This document shows positions 1 to 16,796 of a DNA stretch of 39,850 nucleotides, one piece after another. The DNA lies in NCBI RefSeq assembly GCF_000315625.1, contig NW_005434584.1, positions 155,430 to 195,279 on the forward strand, written 5' to 3'. Each line of letters starts with the position of its first letter. The first letter of the stretch is position 1. The position numbers and the translations under genes are program-made. The notes below the pieces were generated by a model that did no database searches, was not told the DNA's origin, and saw only the letters and a program-made list of their open reading frames with translations. This stretch comes from Guillardia theta CCMP2712. Taxonomy: Eukaryota; Protista; Cryptophyta.

Positions 1-53
1 AAAAAGAAGAGAAAGGGGGGGACCGGGTTTTGTCGCATCTACTTGTCCAAGGG

Positions 54-2294
54 TAGAGCAGGAGAAGAGAGATGAACAGGACGGGATTTATTTTGTCTTC
101 AGCTCCATTTGAGGAGAGAGAAGTTTGGAAATATTTCCTGCAGGTCTTGTCCTTCATCTTTCTGAGACCAACTTGCCTCATGCGCTTCTCCTTCCTGCAG
201 GTTGCTGGTGCTGTCGCCCACATGCACGAGCAGAGGATGATGCACAGAGACATCAAGGTGATATACTTAAACCCTCCTCCTCCTATTGTCTAGCCTAACT
301 GCCCCTCATCATCTTTGTGCTCACCTGATTTGACAGCCAGCTAACATTTTCATCTCTGCAAACAACGTCTTGAAGGTTCGCTTCTTGGGATTGATGACGA
401 ATACAGGTGTATGACAATTTCTTCAGCTTGGCGATCTTGGACTAGGAAGAGTTTTCTCTGCTGAGGTCACTTGCACTGTCCTTCTTATTCGCTCTAAATC
501 TTATTGGCATCCTCGTGTTGGTTTCGTCGTCATTTTCTTGGTCATTTGTTTTGCTCTTGTTGATGATGACAATATATTTTTGTTATTGTTCATGACGCTC
601 ACTTGCATTCAGTCGGTCGAGACTTTCTCCAAGGTAAAAGATTGATTTCATGTTCTCCCTTTCTCTGTTGTTCTCTCGTTATCACCCATCAAACATTGAT
701 CTTCTCCCTCCCTTCCTTTCTCTTGCTCTCCCTTTCTGCCTCCTTCTCACTGGTCTCATTGATGCCGGCAGGTCGGAACTCCCTTGTACATGTCGCCTGA
801 GGTTCTTCACGGGCAGGGCTACGACTTCAAGGTCTCGGCGAAGCTCCTCCTCTTGCTCTCACGGTCTCGCAGTCTGACATGTGGAGTCTGGGATGTCTCC
901 TCTATGAGTTTGCTACTCTCTCCTCCCCCTTCGAGGCGCCGAACCAGGTTCCCCCCGACCTCCCTTCCCCTTCCCCTCCTCCTCCTCTCCTTGCACATCT
1001 GATCTCTCTGAACCTCTGGATTCTGATTTCTTCATCTCCATCGTCTGAGTCAGCCTCCCCCTCGCCTGATCGTGTCCGATTGCTTCATCGTCTGTCAATC
1101 CCCAGTAACAGTATGGCAGAACCTCTACGACATCTTCAAGCGCATCAACGATGGAGACTTCGCTCCTCTCCCCGAGTTGTTCTCTCAAGAGCTCAGGTGC
1201 CGAACCGACGCCTCTAACCCTAAACCCCAAGTCTTCTCCTCTGATTGTGCGAGTAGAGGCCTCGTCAACAGGATGCTGCACAAGGACCCGAAGAAACGGC
1301 CCACGGGTGAGAGAAGATGTGGTGAAGTGTCTGCTCTCCTTCCTCCTTCTCCTCCTCCCTCTCCCCTCCTCCTTTCTCCTCCTCCTCCACCTCCTCCTGC
1401 TCCTCCTCCTACGGACTTCTTCTCTTCGAGTAGTCCTCGCCTCCTCATCCTCTCCTTCAATTTCAGCTTCTCTTTCTGGCACTGACTCCTTCCTTCTGTC
1501 TTCGTCTTCACCTCGCAGCTTCTGAGGCCTTCGCCTTCGCTCAAATGGCCTGCGACTCCTACCAGGAGCGACCGAGTGGACTGATGATGATGGTGAGACA
1601 GTCACACTTGTGGCTGTGTCATGAATCATCTTGACCTGATTCCTTGTGCAGATAGAGATCATTGATCTCTGCCAACTTCTCGACTACGAGGTGAACACAA
1701 GCACACACAAGTTGACTTGATGTTGTGTGATGCTATGGAAGATTTTAAGTCATACCCTATCATTGCCACTTCATCTTCATCTTCATCTTCATCTTCATCT
1801 TCATCTTCATCATCGTCATCGTCATTGTCATCGTCGCTGAAATAATGTTCTTCACTTTGATCCTAGTCAGCCAGCTGCACTGGTTCATCTTTCAGAACTT
1901 CCTCCTGATCTCCTTTTCTAAATTGTTTCTTAATCTGACGACATTCCATCTTATTGCAGGCTCTCTGTCGTGCTCAAGCCCTCCCTCCCCTCACACCAAG
2001 TTTCTTCACGCATGCTCATCCTCATCATGACATCAAGTTTCAATATTTCACTAGCCTTGTCCTCTGGCTCCTCCGCTTCAACGATGTTTCAGTCAGCGAG
2101 GACAGCAGGGACGGCAGCAGGCACCTCGAGACTCTCGACCCTCTCAACGTTTCTTCTCTCCTCCTCGACGCTTGCAAGCAGCTCGGCATCGGCAACGACC
2201 TCTCTCCTGTTCGACTGAAGACGTGAGAAGTTCTCCTCTCCCGCTCCTGTTCCCCTCATACCCTTCCCATGGTTTCTTCCTGGTTGTCATTCCT
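54..2294 (+). pseudogene. Partial duplicate of the NEK-IFT57 gene (kinase C-lobe exons plus IFT57 CH-domain exons), truncated at both ends
   Basis: Near-identical to 18298-20540. The differences I can see are intronic (e.g. 696 T/G, a 3-nt indel near 1447, one TCATCT unit near 1800) or in the first ~90 nt. Identity ends abruptly after TCATTCCT at 2294, inside an intron. Confidence 0.85.
1771..1836 (+). repeat. (TCATCT)n/(TCATCG)n intronic microsatellite
   Basis: Seen directly; the copy at 20011-20082 has one extra unit. Confidence 0.9.
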
Positions 2295-2830
2295 AGTTGG
2301 CATCAACAATGGAGACTTCACTCACACTCTGCCCGAGTTGAGAGAATTCCAGGGCTCTAGACGATGAGCTCTCTTGCTGTGAGATGAGGAAGAAGTTTGT
2401 CAACCTTGAAGAGTCGCCTCCTACTCACAGTCTGGTGGGAAAGCTCGCACGCTGCTGCTCTGCCGAGAGGGCTGAATGGTTAGGACGATCAGCTCCAGCT
2501 CAGATGTCAAGGCACTCAGTGTCTTATCTGAGTACGCTCCTAATCGCCAGGTTTAGGGTTTAGGGTTTTCCATGTGACCTCGAGGATCGCTGCCAGCATG
2601 CAGATCTGGACTCAATGCCCTCGAGGCAGCCGGAGCACCCCACATGAGCTGCCAAGGCATCATGCTGACGAGGACAAGGACCAGGACAAGGATTCAGCGC
2701 TGTTCGATGTCCATCAGCCCGCGCACAGACGACCTGACACTCGCTAACCGAATGAGGCACCTGAAGAGGCAGCTGCGAGACAGACAGACAGTCGGCGCGA
2801 GAAGGCGAGCTGACTCGGCTGGAGGGAACT
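2295..2830 (-). pseudogene. Possible fragment of a spliced minus-strand gene of unknown function, cut at the 2294/2295 junction
   Basis: Minus strand shows GT..AG intron-like segments (e.g. gtgagtagg...ctcacag; gtcacatgg...gattag) between open stretches (AYSDKTLSALTSELELIVLTIQP). No domain recognised. Confidence 0.3.
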
Positions 2831-3437
2831 GAAGGGGCTCAGAGTGAGGTCAGGGGGCCAACAAAAACTGCTTCAGACTCGTTAAATTTCTTTCAGATCC
2901 CCCTCACACTCTCCCTTCCGCTCGCAACTCACCTTCCTCCCTCATTTTAACGGATAGGCGGAGGGCCTGGTCTGGCTGTTTCCATCAGAGTGTTCCAGGG
3001 GCGAAGATGCCAAGCAGGAAGTCTAGCCAGCATCATGTGAGTGGCATAAGAGGAGATAGAGAAGTAAGGTTGAGCTTCAAAGGCTTGAGAGGAAGCGAAG
3101 GTCAATGCTGGGTTTTATAAACAATTCAGAGATTGCGAAGCAGATTTAGGTGGTGTCATGGGGAAAACAGTGGATTTGTGAGAACGGTTGAACTGCGACA
3201 GAGACGATTGGCTCACTCCCCATGCTGTACTACGAGGTATTTGCAGGCAGCATCCGAGGGCTCTTGCAGGAGAGAGTAATAAAGGCTCACTGAGTCAGAT
3301 CGTTTCTCCATTAGCGTTGTCATATATATCTATTTTTACTCACGAAGAAAAAAAAAGGCTTGTAAAGGGTGGGAGACAGAGCGCATTGGGATGGGCTTAG
3401 TCGGATCATGGGGCAGACGTACATCTATCTAGCTAAC

Positions 3438-6400
3438 TTACATTCCATACGCCATCGGCTGCTGACCGTACACGGGCGTCTGCACGGGCATGGGAGCAGC
3501 GGAGGCGTAGTCGACGGGGAGGACGGGGTAGGTTTGTGGGAGGTAGACGGGTACCATCTCCTCCACGGGAGGCTTAGCCACGGCAGCCGGGGCCAGGAAC
3601 TTGTAGGCCAGGAACCCGAGCAGGGCAGCACCGACTACTCCTCCGATCACTCCGCCGACGATGGCGCCGACGTTGGTGCTTGACCCTGGTGTCGTGGTGG
3701 TGGTGGTGGTGGCACCTCCGCTCGGGGAGGAAGAAGCAATCGAGACAGCGAGCTTGCGAGGATCAGTCTTCCACACAAACATCCTCGTGCTCGATGAGAG
3801 ACCAGCCCGAGTCTGTCCGTTGGCGAACTTGCCAATGAGCGTGTCGTTCAGAAACAGGCTTGCCGATGTCGCCGAGCTCGTCGACACAATCATCAACGAC
3901 GGTGCTGTCCAGGTCGAGTCCAGCACGGAGGGCTTGTTCGAGATCGAGTAGGCGTAAGGGCTGCTGAGCGTGTACACCTGCTGCTGGACCGGCTGATCGC
4001 CGAGCATCTGACCGAAGGAGTCCAGCACCCACACTGGCGACCCGGGCTCGTACACGTTGGCAGAGCTTGCGTTGATGGCGCTGGAGGTGGAAGACAAGAG
4101 GCTGCTGCCTGACGCCGTGTCAAAACCGTCCATGAGGTCCTGGAAGTAGAGAGGGTCTGCCGGGAACTGCGAGGGCTTGTAGATCTCTGGGTAGAGGAGC
4201 GAGGGCCTGATCAGCCTCTGGGTGAACTTGTTGGTCATGTCCACGCTCAAGAAGACCTGGTTGGTGAAAGTCTGGTAGGAGTAGGAAGTGCCTGTCACAC
4301 CAGGCAGGTTGCTGCCATCGCCGTTCTCGACGTAACGGTTGAGGGTCAGCTGCAGCGTCGGGTCAGTCGTGACCCCACTCCCCATGTTGCGCACTGAGAA
4401 TCCAGACACGGTGTACACACCACCCGCGCTCATCCCGTACACTGGGACAGCTGAGAAGCCAGTGGCACCGGGATACGCTGACTTCACGTTGAACTGCAGC
4501 GAGAACAAGTTGTTCGGGAAGTTGTAAGGCACGTTCTTCGTGTGCGCCGCGGCTGTAGTGCCACGTCTGCCTCGGTTGGCTGCCGCCACATCTCCGGCGC
4601 CTGGGACGAAAAAGATCTCCTGGTCCAGCTCCGCCCAAACGTTGCGCGTGATCCCGGCAGGGAGAGTAATGCTGCTTGACTGGGCAACATACCTCAAGTG
4701 CATAGACCTCCTTGCAAAGCTTGTTGCCTGGATCGTCGAGGATACTGTCGGGGACGATACCCACTTGACAGTCGCCCCAGCGCTGTGTGCAGACGCTGTG
4801 GTACCGAGCTGAGCCCTTGACACCTGCAGGTTGTTTCCGTTAATGTTGACAACCTGCAGCTGCTCGTTCGACACTTGAATGTAGTCGTTCAGCTTGAACC
4901 CGGATGCGTCCGTCAAGATAACGCTCGTCAAGGAGCTGTTCACAGCAACTGCAAGGGTGGTCTTCTGGAAGCTGGTCTTCTGCTGCAGGGTTACCAAGTC
5001 AGATCCCTCATGGAAGGACCACGTGTTGTAAGGACTGATGCGGTTGATTGTCAACTCATGAGTACCCACCGCCTGCACCTGATCCAGCTCTTGTCCCACC
5101 TTGATGTAGTCACCAGCAACAAAGGTAGAAACATCAAACACCCCAACCTTGTTGTACATGTACAACACAGACTCGTTCTTGGTGTGAGTGAGAGTGGGGT
5201 TTCCTCGAACCACTGTTAGAGATGACCCGGATACACCCGTGACCTGGAGGATCTCGGAGGTGCCCTGATACGTATCCACACGAACAAAGTCCCCAGCGCT
5301 GTAAGTAGAACTCACGTCCCCGTACAAGTTGACAACTGTGTCGTGTGCTGCCATGTCTTGGCTCAAGAGTCTGGCATCCTGAACAACATAGACCTTGGTT
5401 CCGGCAGGGATTACCAGCCGGTTGGTTGTACTCACCGATTGGGTCTGCGGATACATGGACACAAGATTCAATTTGCTATTTGCCGCGTCGATGGACGTAA
5501 CATTGAACACCTGTGCGTCGATGACCACCGTCGCTCCCGCACTGATCCCCTCGAATTGCTTTAAAGTAATATCCGTCAACTCTGTCGTTTGATTGACGGC
5601 TGTGGATACAGTGTCGTTGATGAATTTGACCAAGGTTGGCATTTTGTCGACCTTCTGGATGACAGTTCCAGTCTGGGGAAACTCTCCCTCGGTTGTGTTG
5701 GCCTGTCCTCGAGCGAAGCTGGAGCCTCCCAGATACTTGATCACCTCGTTCTGAGTCCCAGATGTCATCAAAAGGTAGTCGCCTGCAGCGATCCCATTCA
5801 TGTCAGACAAATCACTCGATGTGATGGCGGTATTTGCAGCGATGGTTTTTGTGAGAGTCTTGGGGTTGAAGACGTACGTGACAGGCGTCCCAGCATCTGC
5901 GGTTGCCTCGGCCGTGGTTGACTGCTGTCCACGAACAACCGTCAGGTTCTGCATCAGGTATCCGCTGGTCGAAGAGACAACAGATTGCACGAGCATGACC
6001 TCTCCCAGCATCTGGACATAGTCTCCAGCCTGAAATCCGCTGGAAGATGACCCCAGCACGGGGTCCTTCACCTGGATCAGCGGATCGCTTGCAGAAGCGA
6101 CCTTAGATACGAGCACCATGCCCCGCCGAGTGATGGTCGTACCAAGTGCGGAGGGCTTGGTAGTGGAAAACAATGTTCCAGCCGCGTGCTCCGCCGGTGT
6201 TGTCTCTAGCTCCCCTCTGGTGACATACACCAGATCTCCAGAGATCTCAGTCACCTTCATGATCTCGTTACCCAGCGTGATGTAGGCACCCGCAAACAAC
6301 GAGCTGTCACACCGGCCCTCAATGCGAGAGGAAGCTGCAATGTCAACGCTGTCTTGCCCACCACCGCGCCTGTCTTGTGCGAAGCAGGGAGAGTTCCGCC

Positions 6401-9400
6401 CTGTCCGCGGAGAACGGTCAAGCTGGTTCCCGTCGATGGCACTGATGAGATGAACATGATCTCGTTGTTGATCAGGACATATGTGCCCTGGCTGAACTGA
6501 GTTGCTTTGGTCAACGTCAAGGTGGTCGCAGTGGAGGAGACGTCTTGTAGCAGAACCGATCCTGGATTGAAAGTCCGAACGATGGTTCCGACTCCGTAAG
6601 TCCCCGTGGTGGTGTTGAACTGCCCTCTGTACACCGACAGCGTCGTAGACGTGAGCACAGAGTCAATGAGCAAAATCTCGCTCTTGATCTTGATGTAGTC
6701 GTTGGCGTTAAACCCTGCTGTGGATCCTACTGTCAAGATCTTGGTGGTCGCTGCTGCTCTGCGAGCCGACACCCCTTGGAAGGTGGTCACTGCTACACTC
6801 GCCGTTGAAACACCGTACACTCCGTCGCTAAACCCCGAGCGCAGAAGATAGTCAATCTTGGTCACCTGCTCCGCAGAGTTGCGAAGAGCACCCTTGCTGT
6901 ACGAAAGATCGCCTGGCCAGTAGAGAGGGCCAGGACTCAACGTCTCGGAGTTGGAGCCCTCCGTGAAGTAAACAAGGATCTCCGCACAGGGGTAGGATGC
7001 CCCTGCGTCCGAGGGAAAGAAGAGCTTGAGAGGGTTGGGGGTGTTCGGAGAGAAGCCGAAGCCAGCATTGAGAAGTACAGGGCTGTCAGTGTTGGCGTTC
7101 CACCCGATCGCTGTAAACGCCTCATCGGTCAGAACAGCTCCTGCCTGGGTGCCAACCGTGGAAAGGTAAGTTGGGCAGTTGTCCTGCGAACAAGGGAAGG
7201 TAGTGCAAGGGAACTGTGTGCAGAGTGACCCAGCACACGATGCCGTTCCTGGGCATGAGGGCAGTGGTGTCAAAGCAACATAACCCGCCGGCGTTGTGCA
7301 TGCAGTGGTTGAGCTGCACAAGGTGGGGATGATGTAGGAGCTGCTGCTGCATGTGGGTTGGATGGTAGTCGTGCCAGACGTCGCCTCTGTGAGAGCAATC
7401 TTTCTGACAAGCTCGACGCGAGATGCTACCAGTCCGTTCCTCACCAGGGCCTGAATGGTTGGCCTCGTAGCGCATGTTGTGGCTGACGCTGACACAAATC
7501 GAATCAGAGGTGACGTCACGTAGCCCGATCCCGCATTGATGACCTTGATGCGATACTGGAGTGGAAGAGTCGATGCTGTAAAACCCTTGCTGCTCGCAGT
7601 CAACGAGGAGGACGGTGCGTTGGTGTAGTAATCCACCTGCGTGTCCACGTACTCCAGACCGATCTCTGCCTGGACTCCGCCTGCGGGTGGGGGCTCCACA
7701 ATCACCTTAGGTACTTCACATGCAGAGGCGGACGCGAACATCTCGTTTGCAGTGATCTTGAAGATTAACGATCCCTTCATTCCCTGGAAACCCTTGCTGC
7801 GTTTGACGGTGTAGGCGTTTTCAGAGGCAACGGCCGACACACCGCTCGAGACTCGCATCTGCAGCGTCTTGCGGGTGTTGTACGCTCCATTCGCTGGGTC
7901 CTGAGCTGAGCAGACCTCCATCGCATTCCTGTTGTTCGGAGAGAAGAAGGCGCTTGGATTGGATGTCTTCTCACACTGGCCTTGACACTCGTTCGAAACG
8001 GTGGCAGACAGGGTCAGGGCAGAAGCTGTACAGGGGGATGTTATTGCTGTACCATCAGGGTTCGTACACTTTGATCCTGAGCATCCGCTGCAGGATATCG
8101 TGGCAGTCACCGACAGCCCTGAGGCACCATAACCATAGCCTTCCTGCGTCATCAACACGCCATCAAGGGTCAATCCCTCAGTGGTCCCTGCCACGGCGGT
8201 TGCAAACTTCGTGTAGATGTTGTATGTGCTGTCCGCCGATGCTGTGTCAAAGGCAAAGAACGAGGGTTTGCAGTTGGACTTTTGGTTTGCGGTTTGTGCC
8301 ATATAGTTCTGCTGGTACCCACCAGTTGTAAACAAAATGTCCCTCACTATTGGGATGTTCGCGTAGCCGGTTCCCTGCCGAGTGATCGTGTACTTTGGCA
8401 CACCGTTGCTCACAGAGGTGATTGTTATTTGCAACGTCTGCCCCCCACTCCTCTCAGGTGCATTGAAGATCAAGACGGCATTGGCGCAGTCCGCGAGATT
8501 CGCGTCCGTGGACTTGCCCTTGTACTGCAGCACAAAGTTGTTGTTCACATTCGTCAAAACTGAGGATGCCGACGGAAACGACCATGTCGGGACGCCCATA
8601 GCATTCGCCATCGGGTCCACCAGCCCGTTGGCATTGACTGGAGACGAGGTGATGCTCACGCTGGTGAAGCCATACACAAACCCTACTACATTGGTGCTAG
8701 ACGGCACTGTTACACCAGTAACACGAGAGTTGCCCCACATCGTGCCACTTCTCGAGTAGGTCTGAGAGGTCGCAGACCTGCAGGCCTGGTTGAAGCCGGC
8801 GATGACGGGCGAGTCCATGGAAGAGTGAAACGTGGGAGCCACTGCCGTTGATTGCAAAGTGGCAGCCTGCATCCCTGTAAAGGACGAGTAGGAATGTGAG
8901 CCAGAAACGTGTACTGAAGATGTGTTGAACCCAAGAATGGCCTGGGCTTTCGCTCCTGCGCATGCGCTGATCGCAGGGAATGAAACAGTCGGAGGCGTAA
9001 TGTACCCAGAGCCGCCGTCGGTGACTTGAATGGAGGAGATCACACTTGATGACGTCGTCTGCAAAGTTGCGGTAGCTGTCTTCCCAGATGGAGGTGCAGA
9101 GATCACCAGAGCCCCTGTGCACTTCGTGGTAAAATCCGGATTGGCTGAAGGTGCAGGAACTGTAGTTATCACGATAGACGCAACATAACCAGACGCAACC
9201 TCCGACGAGGTCTTGCGAGCCGAATACTTCTTGAACAACGAGACGGCAGCGTACGCGCTGGTTCCAAGTCCAGTCAGAGAGTCGTACTGATCTCTCTGTT
9301 GCTGGTACATAATCAGGTTGGAGTCTGGCTTCACCTGCACTCTTGATGTGTAGTTGTGTGAAAGATGCACAATCGCTACGGCATCACATGGAGTCTGAGA

Positions 9401-12400
9401 TGACGACGGGTTGGTGAACGTCACTGTCGGGGGGAAGAAGTACCCTGAGCCAGCTTCGGTCAGAGTCACCGATGTCACGCTGCCACCGCTGGCTGAAACG
9501 GTCGCTGTTGCCCGAGTACACAGGTAAGTGTCAGTAGGACACACCAGTGTGTTGGTCGTTGCGTCAACAATCTTATCCACGGACGGGTCTGAGATGGTTA
9601 CCGTCAACCCTGATGCACAGCTGGTTCCGGGGTTGATGATCTCGATTCTCTCGACGCTCGACCTCTGACCCTTGAGCATGAAGATTCCGTCGAAGCTCTG
9701 AGCCACGGTCGTTGCTGGTGGAACAACGCATGTCCCATGAAATCTCGCCGGTCGGAGATATCCGGACCCCCACATGGGAGGGGTGGAAGCCCAGGTGGTT
9801 GGAGCGGAGAAGATGGATGCTGTGGTGCTGGTCAAGGTACCTCCGTTGTTGACGGCGCTCCCCCCGGGGACCTGAGGCTGCTCGATGTTCTTTCCATTCA
9901 CTGTGCACGTTCCAGTCAACGTCCCTCCAAAAACCAGCATCCTCTCAGTGGTCGTTCCCTGCACTTGTACGTTGGAGTGTGGCACAGCCGCAGCAAACTG
10001 GAATCGTGTTCGTTCCTTGATTGTCTTGGAGGCGTCATCCGTAGAGGGAGTGATGTAGGCGTTCTGGTTCGATGGAACGGACTTGAACCTGTACCCAGGA
10101 ATGGTGATGCTGATGCTCTCGCCCTGTCTGATCCATTTCCCCTTCGCCACCTGCAGCTGCAGCTGCGTGTAGATGGTGTAGGGCTTGTTGGCAAGGTCGA
10201 TGCTCCTTGGCTTCTTTCCCTTGAGGTCTGTTACCCAATACACTCCGCCTGCTCCCTGCTTGATGATGTACTCGTTGGACCCAATCATCGCTGTCATGCC
10301 GGTGTACCGACCCACCTGCTCCTTAGGCTTTATCTCACAGTCCTTCACGAAGGATGCTGGAAACTCCTCTTCCACTACAAAGCACGATCCTGATGGGTTG
10401 TAGTCGACGATAGTCTGAGTCACCACGGTGCTCGTCACATTGGTCAACGATACATCGAACACAGGCAGATCAATCTGAGTCAGAGACGTGGATGTGGTGA
10501 CAGACGAAGGCGTCACAGTGGGGATGGAGGTGTACCCGCTGCCTTGCGACGTCAAGTGTGCACTTGCTACCGAGACAAGCACTTTCAGCGCAATCCCAGC
10601 CTTGCCACTCACTGTAGCTGACGGAAAGCCTGTGTACAGCCCTGATGCGGTGACATGCACAGCAGTGCTGCTGCTGTACAGAGATGTTACACTGGCCGTC
10701 GCTGCGGTGACTTGGTAGGTTGCATCGAACACGATAGTGTCTCCTTCCACCAGAGACGTTCCCGCGGCAATGGACACAACCTGCACTCCGACAACCTTGT
10801 ACAGCAGATGCCCGCTTGCAGTTGATGTCACGCCTGAGGAAGCCACGGTAAACGTTTGTCCAGCAAACGCCGACGTTCCAGTCACTTCCGTCAGCCCTCC
10901 ATATCGCACTCGCACGCTCGTGACCGATCCACCTGTGGCCGCAGTGTACTGATTGTTGCGGCACTTGAGCTGCATGCCGACATAGTCTGTCGCTGAAAGG
11001 GATGGGATGGTACTGCTCATCTTGTAGCAGACGTCCTGTGTATAACCGAGCATGTAAGTTCCTGCGTTTGTCACCTTCGTGAGACTCAGCGTGCGGGAGC
11101 CGCTCGAGAAGGTGATGTCGCTGTCCGGTAGGCCCCACGGGCACGACACGCGACTCCAGCACAGGTTCTTGTTCTTGTTGTAGCCGTCGTCGTCAGGAGA
11201 CAACACAAACAAGCCGTCCACGTCTCCGTCGCCTGACCGATGCCTATTCCCGTCCGCCACCCAGCCATCGCTGATGTACGCTCGAGCGCGATCTTCTTGG
11301 TAGTAGTTGAGCTCCCACTCCAGCTGTGTCGAAAACGTGGTGAAGGCCGGGTTAGGAGAGGAGGTCACGCCAAAGATGGGACCCGTGACTGCGACGTACG
11401 ACGGCAGATTTACAAAGAGCATATCTCCGGCATACAAATTCTGTTCCGCGGTCACTGAAAATGTCACATCGGATGTAACTGTTGATCCAAACTGCATCGA
11501 AGTCTTGGCAGATTTCATTCCGCTGTCGATCTCAGTGGTTACAAAGGAGTTCCCTGATACGACTGAGATCGCCTGTGCGGAAGCTTGCGTTGCTTGGTTG
11601 GTGAGTTGGAACTGTACCGTGTACACCGAATAATCGTACAAGTATGCTTGAGCGGTTGCTCCGGTGCCCGTTGGATCCGTAATCACAACCTTCGGGGGGA
11701 GAGTGTAGCCCGATCCAGCAGCAGTGAGAGAGATGGAAGTCACAGACTGGGAGGTCAGAGAGGCAGTGGCTTGTGCCGATGATCCAGTAGCAGACATCAC
11801 TCCAGCACAACTGCTCTTGGTCCAGAATTCCTGCCCAGGTGTCGTGTCGCAGATGACCACGGTAGGATTCGAGTATCCCGAGCCCCCAGCTGTAACAACA
11901 ATTTTGTACAGACCTTGCGTTCTCCTTGCAGAGACGTCAAAGTATGGATCGTACACGAGGGTTGGGATCGATCCAGAATAGATCTGGATGTTGTTGCTGA
12001 GAAACTTGCATCCTGTAGTGAAGGTGGTCGCTGGTACGATCGAAGCGGAATGAAGGTTCGTCCTTGAGTTCATAAACTGCCCATTTCGCACAACTTGGCA
12101 GGAAACGTCTGACTGCGCACTTGACATGCTACTAAATGGCCCGACAGTGATTGTCTGACCCGCAGACAGCTCGTAGTTCGGCTGCAGCTCGGCAGTGATC
12201 CACACGGTGCTGCTAGTCACGTTCGATCCAGAGCGCAAGCTTGACATGATGAACTGACGGTCTGCAATGTACCCAGCGCAACCTGAAGGCTCAGATGGAT
12301 ACCCATACACCATCCTGGTTTTGTCATTCTTGCACAAATACGTCTGCGTTCCCTTGTAGTTCGATGGTGCTGCTTGAGAGTCAACACTCAAAGATATGGC

Positions 12401-15400
12401 AGGGCAGGTCTTTGAGCCCACGTTGTTGTTTGTCATCATGAAACACATTTTATACTTCACATCTTGATTCAACGTCTGACCGGTTTTCAACTGAAATTGA
12501 ATGGTGGATTTGTCGTAGCTGGCAGCGTTGTCCTGGGGGTTCGAGCCAATCGTCTGGAACAAGCCGTTCGAAAGTGCACTGATTGCATATTCATCATACA
12601 AATTCACAGTTGTGCCAGAAGAAAACATCGTCATTCCCGTGAGAGTGAACGTTGTCTGCACGTTAATGTCAATGCTTGGACGCAACGTGATGCAGATCGG
12701 ATTCATGGCTGCTGGTGATGGGTTGAGCTGCCCAATCTCATACTTGTTAAACAGGTTTCGGGTGAGGTACAACGCTTGATGATCGCCTCGAAGGGGACCA
12801 ATCATTGCCTGAGAACTGGCCTGTTTGTTCTGCGCAAATTGCGACTGAACCGTTATGGTCGGACCAGACTGCTCGTTGTCCCCATTCACAAATTGCTTGA
12901 ACTGGAGAACATATATCCACCCAGGGTACATGCAGTTCGTCGCTTGGCCCTTGACAGGGAGCTGGCAGGAGCCCAGGGCAAGTTTGACTACCATCTCCCC
13001 ACTCGTAGAGCTCCAGGTCGTTTTTTCAATGTTTGGAAAATATTGATCTGCTGCAGCTGTTGCCGTCAAAGAGGTCCCAGGTGTATTCGTACCAGTCAGC
13101 CCCGATATGGTAATTTCGGGGCTGAAAGACGTACTGTCCATGTACATGTTCGATCTCAAGGAAATCGTGATCGTGTTGGATTTGGAAACGACCGACGTTG
13201 ACTGCGATATCAGCCTGGTCGGGAAGCCATAAGCGTACGATTTGAGCACACACACATCCCCATCCGTTTCACCATCTTGAAGTGCTCTGTCGACCGAGTT
13301 CTGCACCATCTGCACGTTCTGCGTGAACTGATTGTCTCCTGGACCGAGAGCTGACAAACTCAATGAGACAGTCTGACATGGATTAGCCGACACAGCATTT
13401 TTCAATACGATCGCAAACTTGATGTCCTGCTGTTGAGGGATGGAATAGAACATGTTGTTGGCTGTGTCATCCTGATTCACCGTCAAGACAGTTGTGCCTG
13501 CAGACCAGCTGGTAGTTCTGTGCAACGTTCCACCATTGATGACATCAATGAAGTGGGATGTGGGAGGATTCGATGGCGCTTCGAGTGTCATGGTGTCCCA
13601 GTTGAATGACGGGCAGGCTGTGATGATTGGCTGTGTGACAGTCTGTGAGCCTTGCAACCCTGACAGAGTGATTTGCGCCAAGTTGTTTTGTCCTGCACTG
13701 TTGGATTGCGTGGAGACCCTGTAGTTACTCCGGAGGGTGATGCAAATGTAGTTTGTGACATCAGGGCGAGTGGTTGTTTGTCCGATCTTGTACTTGATAA
13801 AGCCAGGTGCGGCGACGTATCCAACAGTGTTGCCCATGTTCTCCACGCTTTCTGCATTCACAACAGTAGAGCCCTTCGAAACTGTCACTGTCACAGGACA
13901 TGCAGCATTGCCACTGTTAGAATTCTGCCAGTCCCACGACAAGACATACGTGTTGCGTGCAGTCATAATCGTTGACACAGTGATCTTCAGCGCTCCACCA
14001 AGCGACCAGTCCATTTTGGGACTTACGGCCTGCAAGGTCGGGTCACCAATATCAATCTCCGTAGGATTGCCAGCAGAAGAGCACATGTCCGTCAAAGGGA
14101 TGCCACCGTTCAGTCGATTGCTCATCACAGTTATCTTTGGACTGTTGGTCTGGGTTCCACAGAGGCCTTGAAGACTGATCACAGACCCAGAATCGACATT
14201 GAAGTTTGGTGTCATAGTAACAAACACGTGCGTAAGCGATCCGGGATCACTGGAACTCTGAAAGATCGACGTCCTCAGCTTGTTGCCGACCACCTCGATG
14301 ATCTTGGAAGACGGTGAGACATCATTGCTCATCTGAGCAGACACGGAAGTTGAAGATGTGCAGAGGTCGTTGTTTTGGCAAATCTGTCCAGACAAGACAG
14401 CTTTGAGACTCTGGGAAGCTTGAGTATTGGATCCAGTCTTGAGTTTGAACGTGAAGGTTACCACCTCTCCAGCCTGAATGTAGTTGCCAGGTACAAGCTC
14501 GAATGACATGGTTCCAGCAGAGTCGAAATAAGCTTGATTCAAAACCTTGTTGGTCCCTGTTGATCGGAACTTGGCAGGTACGAATGCGTTCGGTGTGCCA
14601 GCCTCGCACTGGCATTTGGACTGGTAGAGGTCAATGTTGCCACTCGGTGTTGCTGAGCCCGACAGTCCGGTGAGTGAAACTGAGGTTGGGTTCACGGAAA
14701 CAGAGTAGATTGTCGCCGAGCTGATCAATGTCACTGTGATGCAGACATCTTGACTGGGCCCGTCGTTGTTTCCAGCAGCGGCCGCATATACAAACGCCGG
14801 CGCTGCTACTGTGCCGACTCCACCTGCTCCTTTCTGCACAGGCATGGGAGGATGGTCGGTCCCAAACCTCACAGATCGGTACTGGTCGAAGGGAACTTGG
14901 TACACCAGGTATTCACTTGTGCATGGAGTAGAAGGGAAGCTCGTGAGGTCTGATACAGCACACCCAAGAGAATTTCCCTCCGCTTGGTAAAAAGCAACGT
15001 TGGCGAGCTGATACCATTTCTCATCAATGCCACCTATCGGTGGCAATGGTCCAAGCCCGTTCTGCTTCCCGTTCACGTCGTAGTTCTGGTACATAGACAC
15101 CTTGTTGATGTACACGCCGGTGATTTGAAGAGCTGTCGGCATGTAAAGTCGCAACGTTTCTCGCTGAGAGTCCCAGTAGCACATGGAGAACGCGTTTGCC
15201 TTGATCTGCTTGAGATCAAAGGCATTGGAAGAAAGGTCTTGCACGATCCCATAGCATCCGGCTATCCCAGGCCCTGTGGCCGCCTGTTGTGATGAAACAG
15301 ATGCCGAGGCAGCCCATGGCTTGTTGATCACCTCCGAGATGCTCACAGATGCAGATGGATTGTTGAGCCATTGTACAGTGCTCTCAGTGGTATCCGATCT

Positions 15401-15750
15401 GTATGCTCCAAAGAGGTTGGAGCTTCCAGAGAACCTGGGGAGGAAGATCTCGATCACCGTGTTGGCTGACAGGATGTCCGAGCCCGACTTCCATGATCCC
15501 AAGGAACCCCAGTAGATCTTCATGTCGGTCGCCTTTAGATCAGTGACACCTCCTTCCAGCTGCAACTGAGCCATCTCGGCGACCGTGTACTTCACGCCTC
15601 CCGATGTCACCACGGCTGCCAACGTCCTCCCAGCGAACAAGCTCAAAAGAAGCAAGGCTGCCTGCTCAAAAGTCTGTGAGAAGAAAAGGAAACGCAAGAA
15701 AACAACTATCTCACCCCCCATTGGAGACAACATGCCCGCGCACGCTGCAT
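3438..15750 (-). CDS. Giant (~4,100 aa) type I membrane/surface protein with tandem beta-repeat modules; one frame break at ~6300-6350
   Basis: ATG at 15750 plus a 53-nt GT-AG intron (15714-15662) gives signal peptide MQRARACCLQWG-AALLLLSLFAGRTLA, in frame with ORF 15733-6257. ORF 6299-3438 continues the same repeat series and ends in an S/T stalk, a TM helix (VGAIVGGVIGGVVGAALLGFLAYKFL) and a short P/Y-rich tail. Confidence 0.85.
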
Positions 15751-16796
15751 GCTCGCAAGCGTGGAGCTACCCCTGGCAACACCCTCACGTGTCCGAGGGA
15801 CTTTATCAAGCCCTCGCGGAGGGGAGAGGGTCGCAGGTCCACTTTGTACCACAAATATTTGCTCAAATCGAATTCTGGTACCACCTGAAGCGGGGCAACA
15901 ATCATGCCGATGCCGTTACATTGCTGGTGGTGGTGGGGTACTTCAAAAAACTAGCCGTTATGCAGCGAGTAGGTCCGTTCGTTCTGCGGTACCTCACTTC
16001 CCCCTGGTACCCCCTTTGCCGTCGGTGATTACCTGCACCTTACCATACCTGCATCACAGGTGGTGGGTGGTAACCCACCCAACTCAATCCCTTTTATGAG
16101 AGGAAGGGTTTTTTATCAGGTTTGCGTGATTTTCAAACAATGGTCTCTTAATGTTGAAATCATTAGCAAAATATGATTTGCACCATCCAATAAATTGCAT
16201 TGGTCATGAAATTTGAATTTGCGTATCAAACGTTTAGTCAACACTTTTCAATACAACACCTCGCAGATATCTCAAAGTGTCTGACAGATGCAGGACAAGA
16301 GCATAAGGTTTTGCCCAGCAGGGTGGACACGCGCGGCCCTTCTCATCATGATGCACACTGAGATGCAAGCGGCCTGAAACACTCATTGACTATCATCCTT
16401 GCGCGAATGAATATGTTGAATCGGAGGCCTACGACTGAAGTCATCTGGAAGGATCTCTAATCTGTACAATAACACGATCGAGACACCTGTCCTCGCCCGT
16501 CCGAGGCTTTTATCAGGCTTCGCACTGACTTACAGTGATGTCACTGAGCGTACTGAGCCTAGTCCCGGAACCACTGCCAAATAAGTCCGGGAGTAAATCC
16601 TGTACTTGTCTGTACCCAGTACGGTACAACATGTCACACCCCGAAGCTGTACGGGTTGCAGATGTCTACAGCAAATGGCAGACAGCCTGGCAGTACGGTC
16701 TCATGAATGATGATCCCGGGCTCTCCGCCGGCGGCGGGCCGGGGGGCCGGCGGCGGCCGGCCGGCGGGGGGACCCGGTATCGGACGACGGATCGCA

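What the first reader, a model, noticed from the sequence alone, without database searches (positions are those of the whole stretch)
3438..15750. Giant, almost intron-free eukaryotic surface protein built from phage-structural-protein-like repeats
Seen: signal peptide, ~4,100 aa ectodomain, single TM, P/Y-rich tail, and three repeat classes. (a) N-terminal ~150-aa beta-sandwich units (IGQ..P..N.ICITL..ITLSGLxG, ~12000-14800). (b) About 9-10 copies of V/I-x-x-x-GSGY-x-x-PTV-x-I/F..G..ATAxA (e.g. ~11880, 11710, 10535, 9445, 9005, 8365, 7525, 4380). (c) About 10 tandem copies of F-x-x-GDYI-x-I-x-x-EI-x-x-V...L-x-V-x-RG-x-x-GT-x-x-x-x-H-x-x-G (6720-4540). From recall, not searched: classes b and c are hallmark modules of baseplate/tail/neck proteins of marine T4-like myoviruses and some bacterial surface proteins. 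Only one intron in 12.3 kb, beside a gene with an intron every ~100-200 bp. Inference: phage/bacteria-derived modules were recruited into a membrane-anchored filament of a protist (adhesin, prey or virus receptor/decoy, hair or periplast component).
Basis: partly seen in the sequence, partly recalled or inferred. Interest (0 to 1): 0.8.

Follow-up and report, generated by a model that had tools for sequence, protein, structure and literature searches.

The report
Giant cryptophyte surface protein, phage-like modules
This is a real gene of the alga Guillardia theta for a 4,109-residue membrane-anchored surface protein whose two main repeat types are the same small modules found in tail, baseplate and capsid proteins of bacteriophages (above all marine cyanophages) and in giant bacterial surface proteins; the supposed intron is in fact a 34-base gap in the reference DNA.

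Summary
The window is Guillardia theta CCMP2712 (identical to GCA_000315625.1), where only a 424-aa fragment of this gene is annotated. The two long minus-strand ORFs (15733-6257, 6299-3438), the N-terminal hydrophobic segment, the single TM helix, the P/Y-rich tail and all three repeat classes are confirmed (5 a, 8 b, 9-10 c).

The break near 6300 is not an intron. Contigs of three other runs carry 34 extra bases at 6306. These give one 4,109-codon ORF and restore a linker that all homologues keep.

The family has at least 9 paralogues in G. theta, plus Hanusia and Rhodomonas transcripts.

Class c is a small beta-barrel. Profiles built from the window alone hit phage Chi, JBD30 and VP1 virion proteins in the PDB, and an AlphaFold model finds the same proteins. 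Class b and c units hit many PHROG tail, baseplate and virion families but no Pfam family. A 6,405-aa cyanophage S-RIM50 baseplate protein carries both modules, and so do bacterial giant surface proteins. Class a and the rest of the protein have no named relatives.

The function (extracellular coat, periplast or adhesion fibril) is inferred, not shown. The donor and route of transfer are unresolved.

The parts
3438..15733 (-). Whole coding region including the stop codon. As it stands in the window it is two ORFs out of frame at ~6306. With the 34 nt seen in other runs it is one ORF of 4,109 codons (433 kDa).
6306..6306 (-). Site of the 34-nt gap (frameshift) of the reference relative to contigs of runs X2, X3 and X5. 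The restored linker aligns with the 17 extra residues that all homologues have here.
   Evidence: (table 5c)
15608..15733 (-). N-terminus with the hydrophobic core AALLLLSLFAG and a ..TLA/AVV site, a probable signal peptide. An alternative start at ATG 15750 combined with a candidate 41-nt intron at 15674-15714 gives a more canonical N-terminus; this was not tested.
14813..15607 (-). N-terminal unique domain (aa ~43-307), strongly conserved in the family, with no Pfam or PHROG match.
12362..14812 (-). Class a array of five tandem ~140-160-aa units (14372-14812, 13865-14293, 13337-13819, 12827-13243, 12362-12769). The motif is I.Q....P...N.I.VTL..N ... ITI.GL.G. There is no named relative.
7433..11974 (-). 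Central region in which eight class b units (GSGY..P.V core; 11786-11974, 11618-11806, 10445-10633, 9353-9541, 8915-9103, 8276-8464, 8042-8230 weak, 7433-7621) alternate with unique conserved domains.
7172..7351 (-). Cysteine-rich stretch (12 Cys in 60 aa) between the last b unit and the c array, with cysteines conserved in the family.
4488..6736 (-). Class c array of nine clear ~60-70-aa beta-barrel units (6536-6736, 6332-6520, 6126-6299, 5835-6059, 5616-5816, 5121-5327, 4950-5147, 4725-4922, 4488-4676) and one degenerate unit at ~5328-5615.
3744..4487 (-). Conserved membrane-proximal domain. It includes a degenerate b-like unit at 4344-4430 and has no match in Pfam, PHROGs or the Atlas.
3672..3743 (-). 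Ser/Thr-rich stalk just outside the membrane.
3603..3674 (-). Single glycine-zipper-like transmembrane helix.
3441..3602 (-). Cytoplasmic tail of 54 aa, P/Y-rich. The motifs VPVYLPQ.YP and YGQQPMAYGM-COOH are conserved in G. theta paralogues and Hanusia.
3365..3437 (-). Short 3' UTR. The 12,388-nt contig of run X3 ends here, 71-73 nt past the stop codon.

Best explanation
The locus is a nuclear gene of Guillardia theta CCMP2712. It is one of at least 9 paralogues of a family seen so far only in cryptophytes. It encodes, essentially without introns, a 4,109-residue type I membrane protein.

The architecture is: signal peptide; a ~4,000-residue all-beta ectodomain made of about 35 modules strung end to end (a unique N-domain, 5 class a units, 8 class b units interleaved with unique domains, a Cys-rich knot, 10 class c beta-barrels, and a membrane-proximal domain); a Ser/Thr stalk; one TM helix; and a short conserved P/Y tail.

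Shown here: classes b and c are homologous to small accessory modules of virion proteins of tailed phages (tail tip, fibre, sheath, baseplate, neck and capsid insertions, most abundantly in marine T4-like cyanophages) and of giant bacterial surface proteins.

Inferred: these modules entered the cryptophyte lineage from a prokaryotic or viral source before Guillardia, Hanusia and Rhodomonas diverged, and were built into a host surface protein. The protein projects as a long, rigid, poorly N-glycosylated fibril or lattice element from the outer face of the plasma membrane (surface coat, surface periplast or adhesion). The conserved tail ties it to the submembrane layer or to sorting machinery.

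The reference DNA carries a 34-nt frameshifting gap in this copy. Other data sets of the same organism carry the intact form.
For: Identity and reality:
- The window equals the 2012 G. theta assembly at 100% over 16,260 nt.
- A 424-aa fragment, GUITHDRAFT_165364, is 100% identical.
- The flank holds an intron-rich kinase/IFT57 gene.
- GC content is like the flanks.

Family:
- Seven G. theta proteins of 3,639-4,176 aa at 43-57% identity over the whole-length alignment, and two Hanusia phi transcripts.
- Further Hanusia and Rhodomonas transcripts, and a 1,321-aa G. theta member with the same tail.

Intact form:
- 34 extra nt in contigs of 3 runs from 3 studies give a single 4,109-codon ORF.
- The restored linker matches the homologues.
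- The X3 contig of 12,388 nt is the longest of its run and ends 71-73 nt after the stop codon.

Class c:
- A profile from the window alone hits phage Chi tail-tip protein 8vjh_A (E 2.7e-6), the VP1 capsid 9in6_M and the JBD30 J-like protein 8rk3_o. The family profile reaches E 1e-8.
- The AF2 model has pLDDT 82. The structure search puts the same four phage proteins on top, Z 7.5-6.0.
- BFVD gives dozens of phage models at TM 0.75-0.80, rmsd ~1 A and 30-44% identity.
- 28 of 50 units hit phrog_4406, 23 hit phrog_11439 and 21 hit phrog_1101.

Class b:
- 15 of 50 units hit phrog_701 and phrog_19630. Others hit baseplate wedge, tail fibre and head-closure families, with the best E at 3e-10.
- 92 of 93 tblastn records are cyanophages.
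- The Atlas shape neighbours are T4 neck, gp8, gp53 and sheath clusters.

Both modules together:
- Cyanophage S-RIM50 YP_009302175.1 (6,405 aa) has 9 b units and 1 c unit.

Breadth:
- 2,884 cluster representatives at E<=1e-3.
- Carriers sit on phage-like and bacterial contigs.

Secretory route and packing:
- N-x-S/T sequons number 15 against 46.6+-5.7 expected, with none in the first 1,170 aa. They are depleted in every paralogue.

Age of the arrays:
- A unit is 44-52% identical to the same-position unit of homologues but 16-36% identical to other units.
Against: - The function is not tested at all.
- The run kinds (RNA or DNA) are guesses, so transcription rests on contig shape and on transcriptome-derived homologues.
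- The reference DNA and run X1 show the frameshifted form, so this copy could be a null allele in the sequenced line.
- Names or context were checked for only ~30 of the 150 best non-family hits. 'Cryptophytes only among eukaryotes' is therefore provisional. Class a has feature-level neighbours labelled Eukaryota in the Atlas.
- The class b model is mediocre (pLDDT 70) and has no PDB match.
- The tree of c units does not resolve one origin or a donor.
- Signal peptide and TM were judged by hydropathy and alignment only.
Confidence: 0.62

Rival explanations
1. This copy is a pseudogene or null allele in G. theta CCMP2712. The 34-nt deletion is real and fixed in the DNA, translation stops 21 codons after the shift, and at most a 3,158-residue secreted protein without anchor is made. 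The intact contigs would then come from another allele, a near-identical second copy or another subline.
For: The 2012 assembly and the contigs of run X1 both lack the 34 nt. JGI annotated only a 424-aa fragment.
Against: The 953 codons downstream are open and conserved. Three runs from three studies, identical to the window at every other base over 6 kb, hold the intact form. X1 may be the data behind the assembly and so may not be independent. Contigs drop minority variants.
Confidence: 0.2
2. The modules did not come straight from a phage or bacterium. They came through a eukaryotic virus (a polinton-like virus, virophage or giant virus) whose fibre genes already carried phage-type modules and which integrated into a cryptophyte genome.
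For: Polinton-like viruses endogenous in cryptophytes, G. theta included, carry bacteriophage-like fibre proteins (PMC12220804, read). The modules are mobile between unrelated virion proteins.
Against: No viral hallmark gene lies next to this gene, and the flanks are cellular genes and non-LTR elements. The PLV domains named in that paper (collagen, phage tail fibre repeat, BppL_N) are not the b or c modules. Cultured-phage hits are overwhelmingly cyanophage.
Confidence: 0.15
3. The resemblance of b and c to phage modules is compositional (Ser/Thr/Gly/Ala-rich beta strands) or convergent, not homology, and the protein is a lineage-specific invention.
For: Units are short (50-70 aa). Single pairwise E-values are modest (tblastn 5e-4 to 1; hhalign probabilities 83-87%). 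Foldseek against the PDB gave nothing significant.
Against: Sequence profiles and an independent structure search pick the same four phage proteins. The match covers a specific motif (G-D-Y-I..E-I..V..L-T-V.R-G..G-T.A..H) at 30-44% identity and ~1 A rmsd. Hits are confined to virion and surface proteins rather than to S/T-rich proteins in general. Other S/T-rich parts of the same protein hit nothing.
Confidence: 0.04
4. The architecture is the same but the role is different: a component of flagellar hairs or scales, or a prey/bacterium-binding adhesin or virus decoy, rather than a general coat or periplast element.
For: Phage and bacterial carriers of b and c use them in host-contacting fibres and adhesin-like giants with PA14, FG-GAP or RTX domains.
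Against: There is no direct evidence either way. A TM anchor with a conserved cytoplasmic tail fits a plasma-membrane resident better than a shed hair or scale.
Confidence: 0.25

Closest known systems
Giant virion structural / 'baseplate wedge initiator' proteins of T4-like cyanomyoviruses (e.g. Cyanophage S-RIM50 YP_009302175.1, 6,405 aa; PHROG families 2885, 4406, 701)
   Same: They carry both the GSGY..P.V module (class b) and the GDYI..EI..V..LTV.RG..GT.A..H beta-barrel (class c) as repeated beads in multi-thousand-residue beta-rich proteins.
   Different: They are phage virion parts without signal peptide, TM anchor or cytoplasmic tail. They have no class a units, no N-terminal or membrane-proximal domains of the cryptophyte family, and a different order and number of modules.
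Tail-tip / central-fibre (J-like) and accessory domains solved in phages Chi (8vjh_A), JBD30 (8rk3_o), GP4 (8jov_1) and the VP1 capsid insertion (9in6_M)
   Same: The class c unit matches these domains by sequence profile (E 1e-8 to 4e-3) and by fold (Z 7.5-6.0, up to 30% identity).
   Different: In those proteins the barrel occurs once or twice, inserted in a larger virion protein. Here it occurs ten times in tandem in a cellular membrane protein.
Giant bacterial cell-surface proteins with FG-GAP, PA14 or RTX (HemolysinCabind) domains (metagenomic P0017 7,472 aa with 33 c units; P0019; P0030 on a 4.4-Mb chromosome)
   Same: Long tandem arrays of class c units in secreted, adhesin-like giants. 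These are the best non-cryptophyte scores in the exhaustive search (E 3.5e-130 to 1e-38).
   Different: They have prokaryotic secretion and context and other partner domains. None has the cryptophyte a-b-c order or the TM/tail.
[quoted passage not shown] 126 in PMC6212826)
   Same: A very large secreted or surface polypeptide of a cryptophyte that forms the extracellular layer. The size class and location fit what this gene predicts.
   Different: As far as I know no sequence is available for that polypeptide, so no comparison was possible. G. theta has a different, non-plate surface. The link is a hypothesis only.
Bacteriophage-like fibre proteins of polinton-like viruses in cryptophytes (PMC12220804)
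   Same: A precedent for phage-type attachment modules residing in cryptophyte nuclear DNA.
   Different: Those are viral genes inside integrated elements and carry other named domains. This is a cellular, multi-copy membrane-protein family outside any recognisable element.

Membership tests
Class c module (unnamed phage virion beta-barrel; PHROGs 4406/1101/11439/7578) | Sequence signature hydrophobic-x-x-G-D/x-Y-I ... E-I/M-x-x-V ... L-T-V-x-R-G-x-x-G-T-x-A-x-x-H detected by external profiles | tested here: met
   28/50, 23/50 and 21/50 units hit phrog_4406, 11439 and 1101, best E 7e-10. The window-only profile hits 8vjh_A at E 2.7e-6.
Class c module (unnamed phage virion beta-barrel; PHROGs 4406/1101/11439/7578) | Small beta-barrel fold superposable on the solved phage domains | tested here: met
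   AF2 pLDDT 82. VIA Z 7.5-6.0 to 9in6_M, 8rk3_o, 8vjh_A and 8jov_1. BFVD TM 0.75-0.80, rmsd ~1 A. Z is below 8, so the fold alone would be weak; it counts because the sequence profiles find the same chains.
Class b module (GSGY..P.V unit of cyanophage structural/baseplate/neck proteins; PHROGs 701/19630/5342/460/708/2885) | Sequence signature detected by external phage profiles | tested here: met
   15/50 units hit phrog_701 (best E 3e-10). 8/50 hit phrog_2885 (1e-9). hhalign to S-RIM50 gives 83%. 92/93 tblastn records are cyanophage.
Class b module (GSGY..P.V unit of cyanophage structural/baseplate/neck proteins; PHROGs 701/19630/5342/460/708/2885) | Shared fold | tested here: inconclusive
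   AF2 pLDDT 70. No PDB match above Z 2.8. Atlas neighbours are T4 neck, gp8, gp53 and sheath clusters at TM 0.55-0.64 only.
Eukaryotic type I membrane protein | N-terminal signal peptide, one TM helix near the C-terminus, short cytoplasmic tail | tested here: met
   Only two hydrophobic 19-mers, at aa ~25 and 4032-4040 of the intact form. Both are conserved in paralogues. Sequon depletion fits ER passage. No dedicated predictor was available.
Intact, expressed gene in G. theta | Uninterrupted reading frame in genomic DNA | tested here: not met
   The window, the 2012 assembly and the X1 contigs lack 34 nt at 6306, which shifts the frame.
Intact, expressed gene in G. theta | Uninterrupted frame in transcripts and evidence of transcription | tested here: inconclusive
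   Contigs of X2, X3 and X5 give one 4,109-codon ORF. The X3 contig has gene-length and gene-end boundaries. However, the run kinds are not on record.
Any named (Pfam) domain family, including widespread eukaryotic ones | Score above the gathering threshold for any unit or inter-repeat domain | tested here: not met
   Nothing above the cut-off for the whole protein, for ten pieces, or for the a and c unit sets (b units lie within the scanned whole protein and pieces). The best hit was K1-lyase_Rider at E 0.047.
Surface periplast component protein of cryptophytes | Localisation in the extracellular periplast layer and self-assembly | not testable with these tools
   Only a literature pointer.

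The most novel reading that the evidence does not exclude
Cryptophytes built the main structural protein of their extracellular surface layer (the long-sought high-molecular-mass surface periplast or coat polypeptide) from bead modules captured from cyanophage virions or bacterial adhesins. The modules keep their original job of rigid, glycan-free, self-associating beta beads, so a eukaryotic cell coat would be assembled on principles borrowed from phage baseplates and fibres. The 34-nt DNA/contig discrepancy would then mark allelic variation (with decay of the null transcript) within a family under surface-driven selection.
Probability: 0.15. Interest if true: 0.85.

Novelty: new variant of a known kind. 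Interest (0 to 1): 0.63.

Why it matters
- It gives a sequence-level candidate for the molecular make-up of the cryptophyte cell surface. No component of that surface is known by sequence as far as the searched literature shows, and no paper mentions any of the family's gene identifiers.
- It defines two unnamed but very widespread modules of phage virions and bacterial surface proteins (2,884 cluster representatives at 50% identity). It gives the first confident model of one of them and shows it corresponds to already solved but unnamed domains in phages Chi, JBD30, GP4 and VP1.
- It is a clean case of prokaryote/virus-type structural modules becoming part of a multi-copy eukaryotic membrane-protein family.
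- It corrects the reference annotation, in which a 12.3-kb gene is represented by a 424-aa fragment because of a 34-nt gap.

Tried and rejected
1. An intron at the ORF junction is rejected. The only GT..AG intervals of the right phase (e.g. 44 nt) would delete residues conserved in all homologues. No joint is seen there, and other runs have an insertion instead.
2. tblastn of the whole 566-aa c region against cultured phages at E 1e-3 found nothing. A two-unit query at E<=1 was needed.
3. phmmer of the 3,138-aa ORF against the PDB found nothing. Profiles of single units were needed.
4. Foldseek of the c model against the PDB found nothing significant; the top rows were F1/V1-ATPase N-terminal barrels.
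5. The class b model against the PDB found nothing above Z 2.8.
6. Class a found nothing in the PDB by profile, nothing in Pfam and nothing in cultured phages.
8. The maximum-likelihood tree of 160 c units is unresolved. It has 60 columns, 14 starred branches, and cryptophyte units in at least 3 groups, so there is no donor inference.
9. The 33 letters of the insertion occur nowhere else in the window, and no flanking repeat explains the gap.
10. The Atlas feature search on the membrane-proximal domain gave no usable hit.
11. The identity of the 119-kb metagenomic contig that carries a/b/c/PA14 genes stays unresolved. It has no tRNA and no phage hallmark match.
12. Contamination by bacterial or phage DNA is rejected. 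The gene has eukaryotic flanks, paralogues on several scaffolds, homologues in two other cryptophyte transcriptomes, and a signal peptide, TM and tail.
Full report
**What is in the sequence**

On the minus strand lie two long ORFs, 15733..6257 (3,158 codons) and 6299..3438 (953 codons), overlapping out of frame by 43 nt. GC content (0.50-0.58) does not differ from the flanks.

The translation begins with a hydrophobic segment (..QAALLLLSLFAGRTLA/AVV..). It ends with a Ser/Thr-rich stalk, one glycine-rich TM helix (window 3603-3674) and a 54-residue P/Y-rich tail.

- Class a has five tandem ~140-160-aa units at 12362-14812.
- Class b has seven strong units, one weak unit and a degenerate one near 4344-4430.
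- Class c has nine clear units and one degenerate unit at 4488-6736.

**Whose gene it is**

A 424-aa protein annotated as GUITHDRAFT_165364 of Guillardia theta CCMP2712 is 100% identical to part of the second ORF. The locus fetched from GCA_000315625.1 (JH993054.1) is identical to window 1-16260 without a single gap. The window is therefore the published G. theta nuclear assembly, in which this 12.3-kb gene is represented only by a fragment.

**The junction is a 34-nt gap, not an intron**

- Around 6300 the two frames meet within ~20 nt.
- All homologues have 17 more residues exactly there.
- When contigs of four public runs were laid on 3300-9299, the contigs of X2, X3 and X5 (three studies) matched the window at every base. 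The exception is 33 letters lying between two pieces that both include base 6306, a net +34 nt (tables 5c and 8).
- Inserting those letters gives one ORF of 12,330 nt: 4,109 codons, 433 kDa, and no stop before the natural one. The linker then reads ..LPLALRAGVTTTQTSINITDTSSLFAGAYI... This aligns with Hanusia ..LPLTLKTAINSATATFLVSDVSALFVGNYI...
- No spliced joint was reported at this place in any run (table 5).
- The gapped form is in the 2012 assembly and in the contigs of X1, which may be the data behind that assembly.
- The kinds of the runs are not on record. X3 looks like RNA: its 12,388-nt contig is the longest record of the run, starts 71-73 nt past the stop codon, and by its length ends at the 5' end of the gene.
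- I cannot tell whether the gap is a null allele, a subline mutation or a consensus artefact. The 953 open, conserved downstream codons argue against an old pseudogene.
- At the 5' end there is an untested candidate 41-nt GTGAG..CAG intron (15674-15714). Together with ATG 15750 it would give a more canonical signal peptide.

**The family**

The word search found seven G. theta proteins of 3,639-4,176 aa and two Hanusia phi transcripts, collinear over 84-99% of the query. They are 43-59% identical over the whole-length alignment (45-61% in the best local BLASTP alignment). The exhaustive search added further Hanusia and Rhodomonas salina transcripts and a 1,321-aa G. theta member that has the c array and the same TM/tail.

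Unit number differs between members: nine c units in this gene and its Hanusia counterpart, six in most G. theta paralogues. A given unit is 44-52% identical to the same-position unit of homologues but only 16-36% identical to other units. The arrays are therefore old and are not being homogenised. The tail motifs VPVYLPQ.YP and YGQQPMAYGM-COOH are conserved.

**What the modules are: class c**

- No Pfam model reaches its threshold on the whole protein, on ten pieces, or on the a and c unit sets; the b units lie within those scanned sequences. NCBIfam gives nothing either.
- A profile made only from the nine units of the window hits three phage proteins in the PDB: the minor tail protein of the phage Chi tail tip (8vjh_A, E 2.7e-6, two sites), the capsid protein of Vibrio phage VP1 (9in6_M, 2.5e-3) and the J-like protein of JBD30 (8rk3_o). 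The family profile reaches 1e-8.
- An AlphaFold model of one unit (pLDDT 82, a small beta-barrel) was aligned to 48,161 PDB representatives. It puts 9in6_M, 8rk3_o, 8vjh_A and 8jov_1 (phage GP4 fibre) on top at Z 7.5-6.0, followed by the N-terminal barrels of F1/V1 ATPases.
- In BFVD, dozens of phage models match at TM 0.75-0.80, ~1 A rmsd and 30-44% identity. They include sheath, fibre and baseplate proteins of Synechococcus phages.
- The Atlas shape neighbours are gp15, gp18-domain-III and SU10-adaptor clusters of Uroviricota.
- Scanned singly, 28 of 50 units hit phrog_4406 (virion structural protein), 23 hit phrog_11439 and 21 hit phrog_1101 (tail fibre, tail).

**What the modules are: class b**

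- 15 of 50 units hit phrog_701 and phrog_19630. Others hit baseplate wedge, tail fibre and head-closure families, down to E 3e-10.
- 92 of 93 tblastn records among cultured phages are Synechococcus or Prochlorococcus phages.
- The model is only fair (pLDDT 70) and has no PDB match. Its Atlas neighbours are T4 neck, gp8, gp53 and sheath clusters.

**Both modules together and their breadth**

- A two-unit c query likewise finds 49 cyanophage records among 57.
- Both modules occur together in a named protein, the 6,405-aa 'virion structural protein / baseplate wedge initiator' of Cyanophage S-RIM50, which has 9 b units and 1 c unit.
- The exhaustive profile search of residues 2025-3134 found 2,884 cluster representatives at E<=1e-3 and 394 at <=1e-10.
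- The carriers whose context I read were of three kinds:
  - a 295-kb circular jumbo-phage-like contig;
  - a phage-like 15-kb contig;
  - bacterial chromosomes, where the proteins also carry FG-GAP, PA14 or RTX domains and sit next to ECF sigma/kinase pairs.
- The best non-cryptophyte hit, a 7,472-aa protein with 33 c units, belongs to the bacterial kind.

**The rest of the protein**

- The N-domain, class a, the domains between b units, the Cys-rich stretch and the membrane-proximal domain hit nothing in Pfam or PHROGs.
- Class a is absent from cultured phages and from the PDB by profile.
- Class a has one clear relative outside the family, at hhalign 98.4%, E 6e-15 and 30% identity. It is a 2,432-aa PA14/a/c protein on a 119-kb, ~62% GC metagenomic contig whose genes are same-strand and overlapping in prokaryotic style.
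- Atlas feature neighbours of the a array are unnamed clusters labelled Eukaryota. This is a lead only.

**An additional feature**

N-x-S/T sequons are strongly depleted: 15 against 46.6+-5.7 in shuffles, with none in the first 1,170 residues. The same holds in all nine homologues. This is what selection would produce in a protein that passes the ER and must stay free of N-glycans, for instance to pack tightly.

**How it most likely works**

Shown:
- the architecture of a type I membrane protein with a ~4,000-residue ectodomain of beta modules;
- homology of b and c to phage virion and bacterial surface modules.

Inferred:
- the ectodomain forms a long, stiff, bead-on-a-string fibril or a lattice element on the outer face of the plasma membrane (coat, surface periplast or adhesion);
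- it is anchored by the TM helix and coupled by its conserved tail to the inner periplast layer or to sorting machinery.

[quoted passage not shown] 1997, listed in PMC6212826).

The direction of transfer (prokaryote or virus to cryptophyte) follows from distribution: thousands of prokaryotic or viral carriers, against cryptophytes only among the eukaryotic sources I could read. The donor is not resolved. A route through eukaryotic viruses is possible, since cryptophyte polinton-like viruses carry phage-like fibre proteins (PMC12220804).

**Novelty**

Full-text searches for nine gene identifiers of the family returned no paper. Giant modular surface proteins, and the borrowing of prokaryotic domains by protists, are known kinds. 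The particular modules, their use in a membrane-anchored multi-copy cryptophyte family and the corrected gene model are new. I rate this as a new variant of a known kind.

Noticed in passing
window 3441-15733 (whole protein) and homologues P0007-P0015: N-glycosylation sequons (N-x-S/T) are 2-5-fold depleted in every family member despite ~24% Ser+Thr and 5% Asn. Here there are 15 against 46.6+-5.7 expected, and none in the first 1,170 residues.
   Followed up: partly
window 15674-15750: A candidate 41-nt intron (GTGAG...CAG, pyrimidine-rich) lies just after the annotated ATG. With the upstream ATG at 15750 it stays in frame and gives a shorter, more canonical signal peptide. The length of the X3 contig would then reach ~9 nt upstream of that ATG.
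   Followed up: no
window 3929-3993: Short contigs of X1 and X2 replace 63 nt by 69 other letters here (table 5). This is probably a paralogue or allele sharing the flanking words. It is not seen in X3 or X5.
   Followed up: no
L004, L009, L010, L011 (ENA ERZ10646634 contig_14579, 119,101 nt, and a 103-kb twin): On a metagenomic contig of ~62% GC, at least 50 kb of same-strand, partly overlapping genes are nearly all built from a, b, c and PA14 modules (e.g. P0050, P0040, P0033, P0148). No tRNA and no phage hallmark match were found. It could be phage or bacterium, and it is the only non-cryptophyte carrier of class a seen.
   Followed up: partly
P0017 (7,472 aa; 25 near-identical members on 24-46-kb ENA contigs): A giant protein with 33 class c units plus PA14 and FG-GAP recurs in many metagenomes. 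It is the best non-cryptophyte match to the family profile (E 3.5e-130).
   Followed up: partly
L002 (ENA ERZ19489113 s613.ptg000732c, 294,992 nt): A circular-named 295-kb contig with dCMP deaminase, primase and SNF2 helicase genes encodes a 3,526-aa protein with 29 class b stretches. It is probably a jumbo phage.
   Followed up: no
G. theta scaffold of 83,341 nt (P0008, P0010, P0020): Two full-length paralogues and a short 1,321-aa member (GUITHDRAFT_120759, with the c array and the same TM/tail) lie on one scaffold. This gene and GUITHDRAFT_115981 share scaffold JH993054.1. The family is therefore partly clustered.
   Followed up: no
window 3300-3607: In run X5 a 1,414-nt contig runs from outside the window stretch into the last 170 nt of the coding region on the same DNA. 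This suggests an overlapping neighbouring transcript, or that X5 contains DNA.
   Followed up: no
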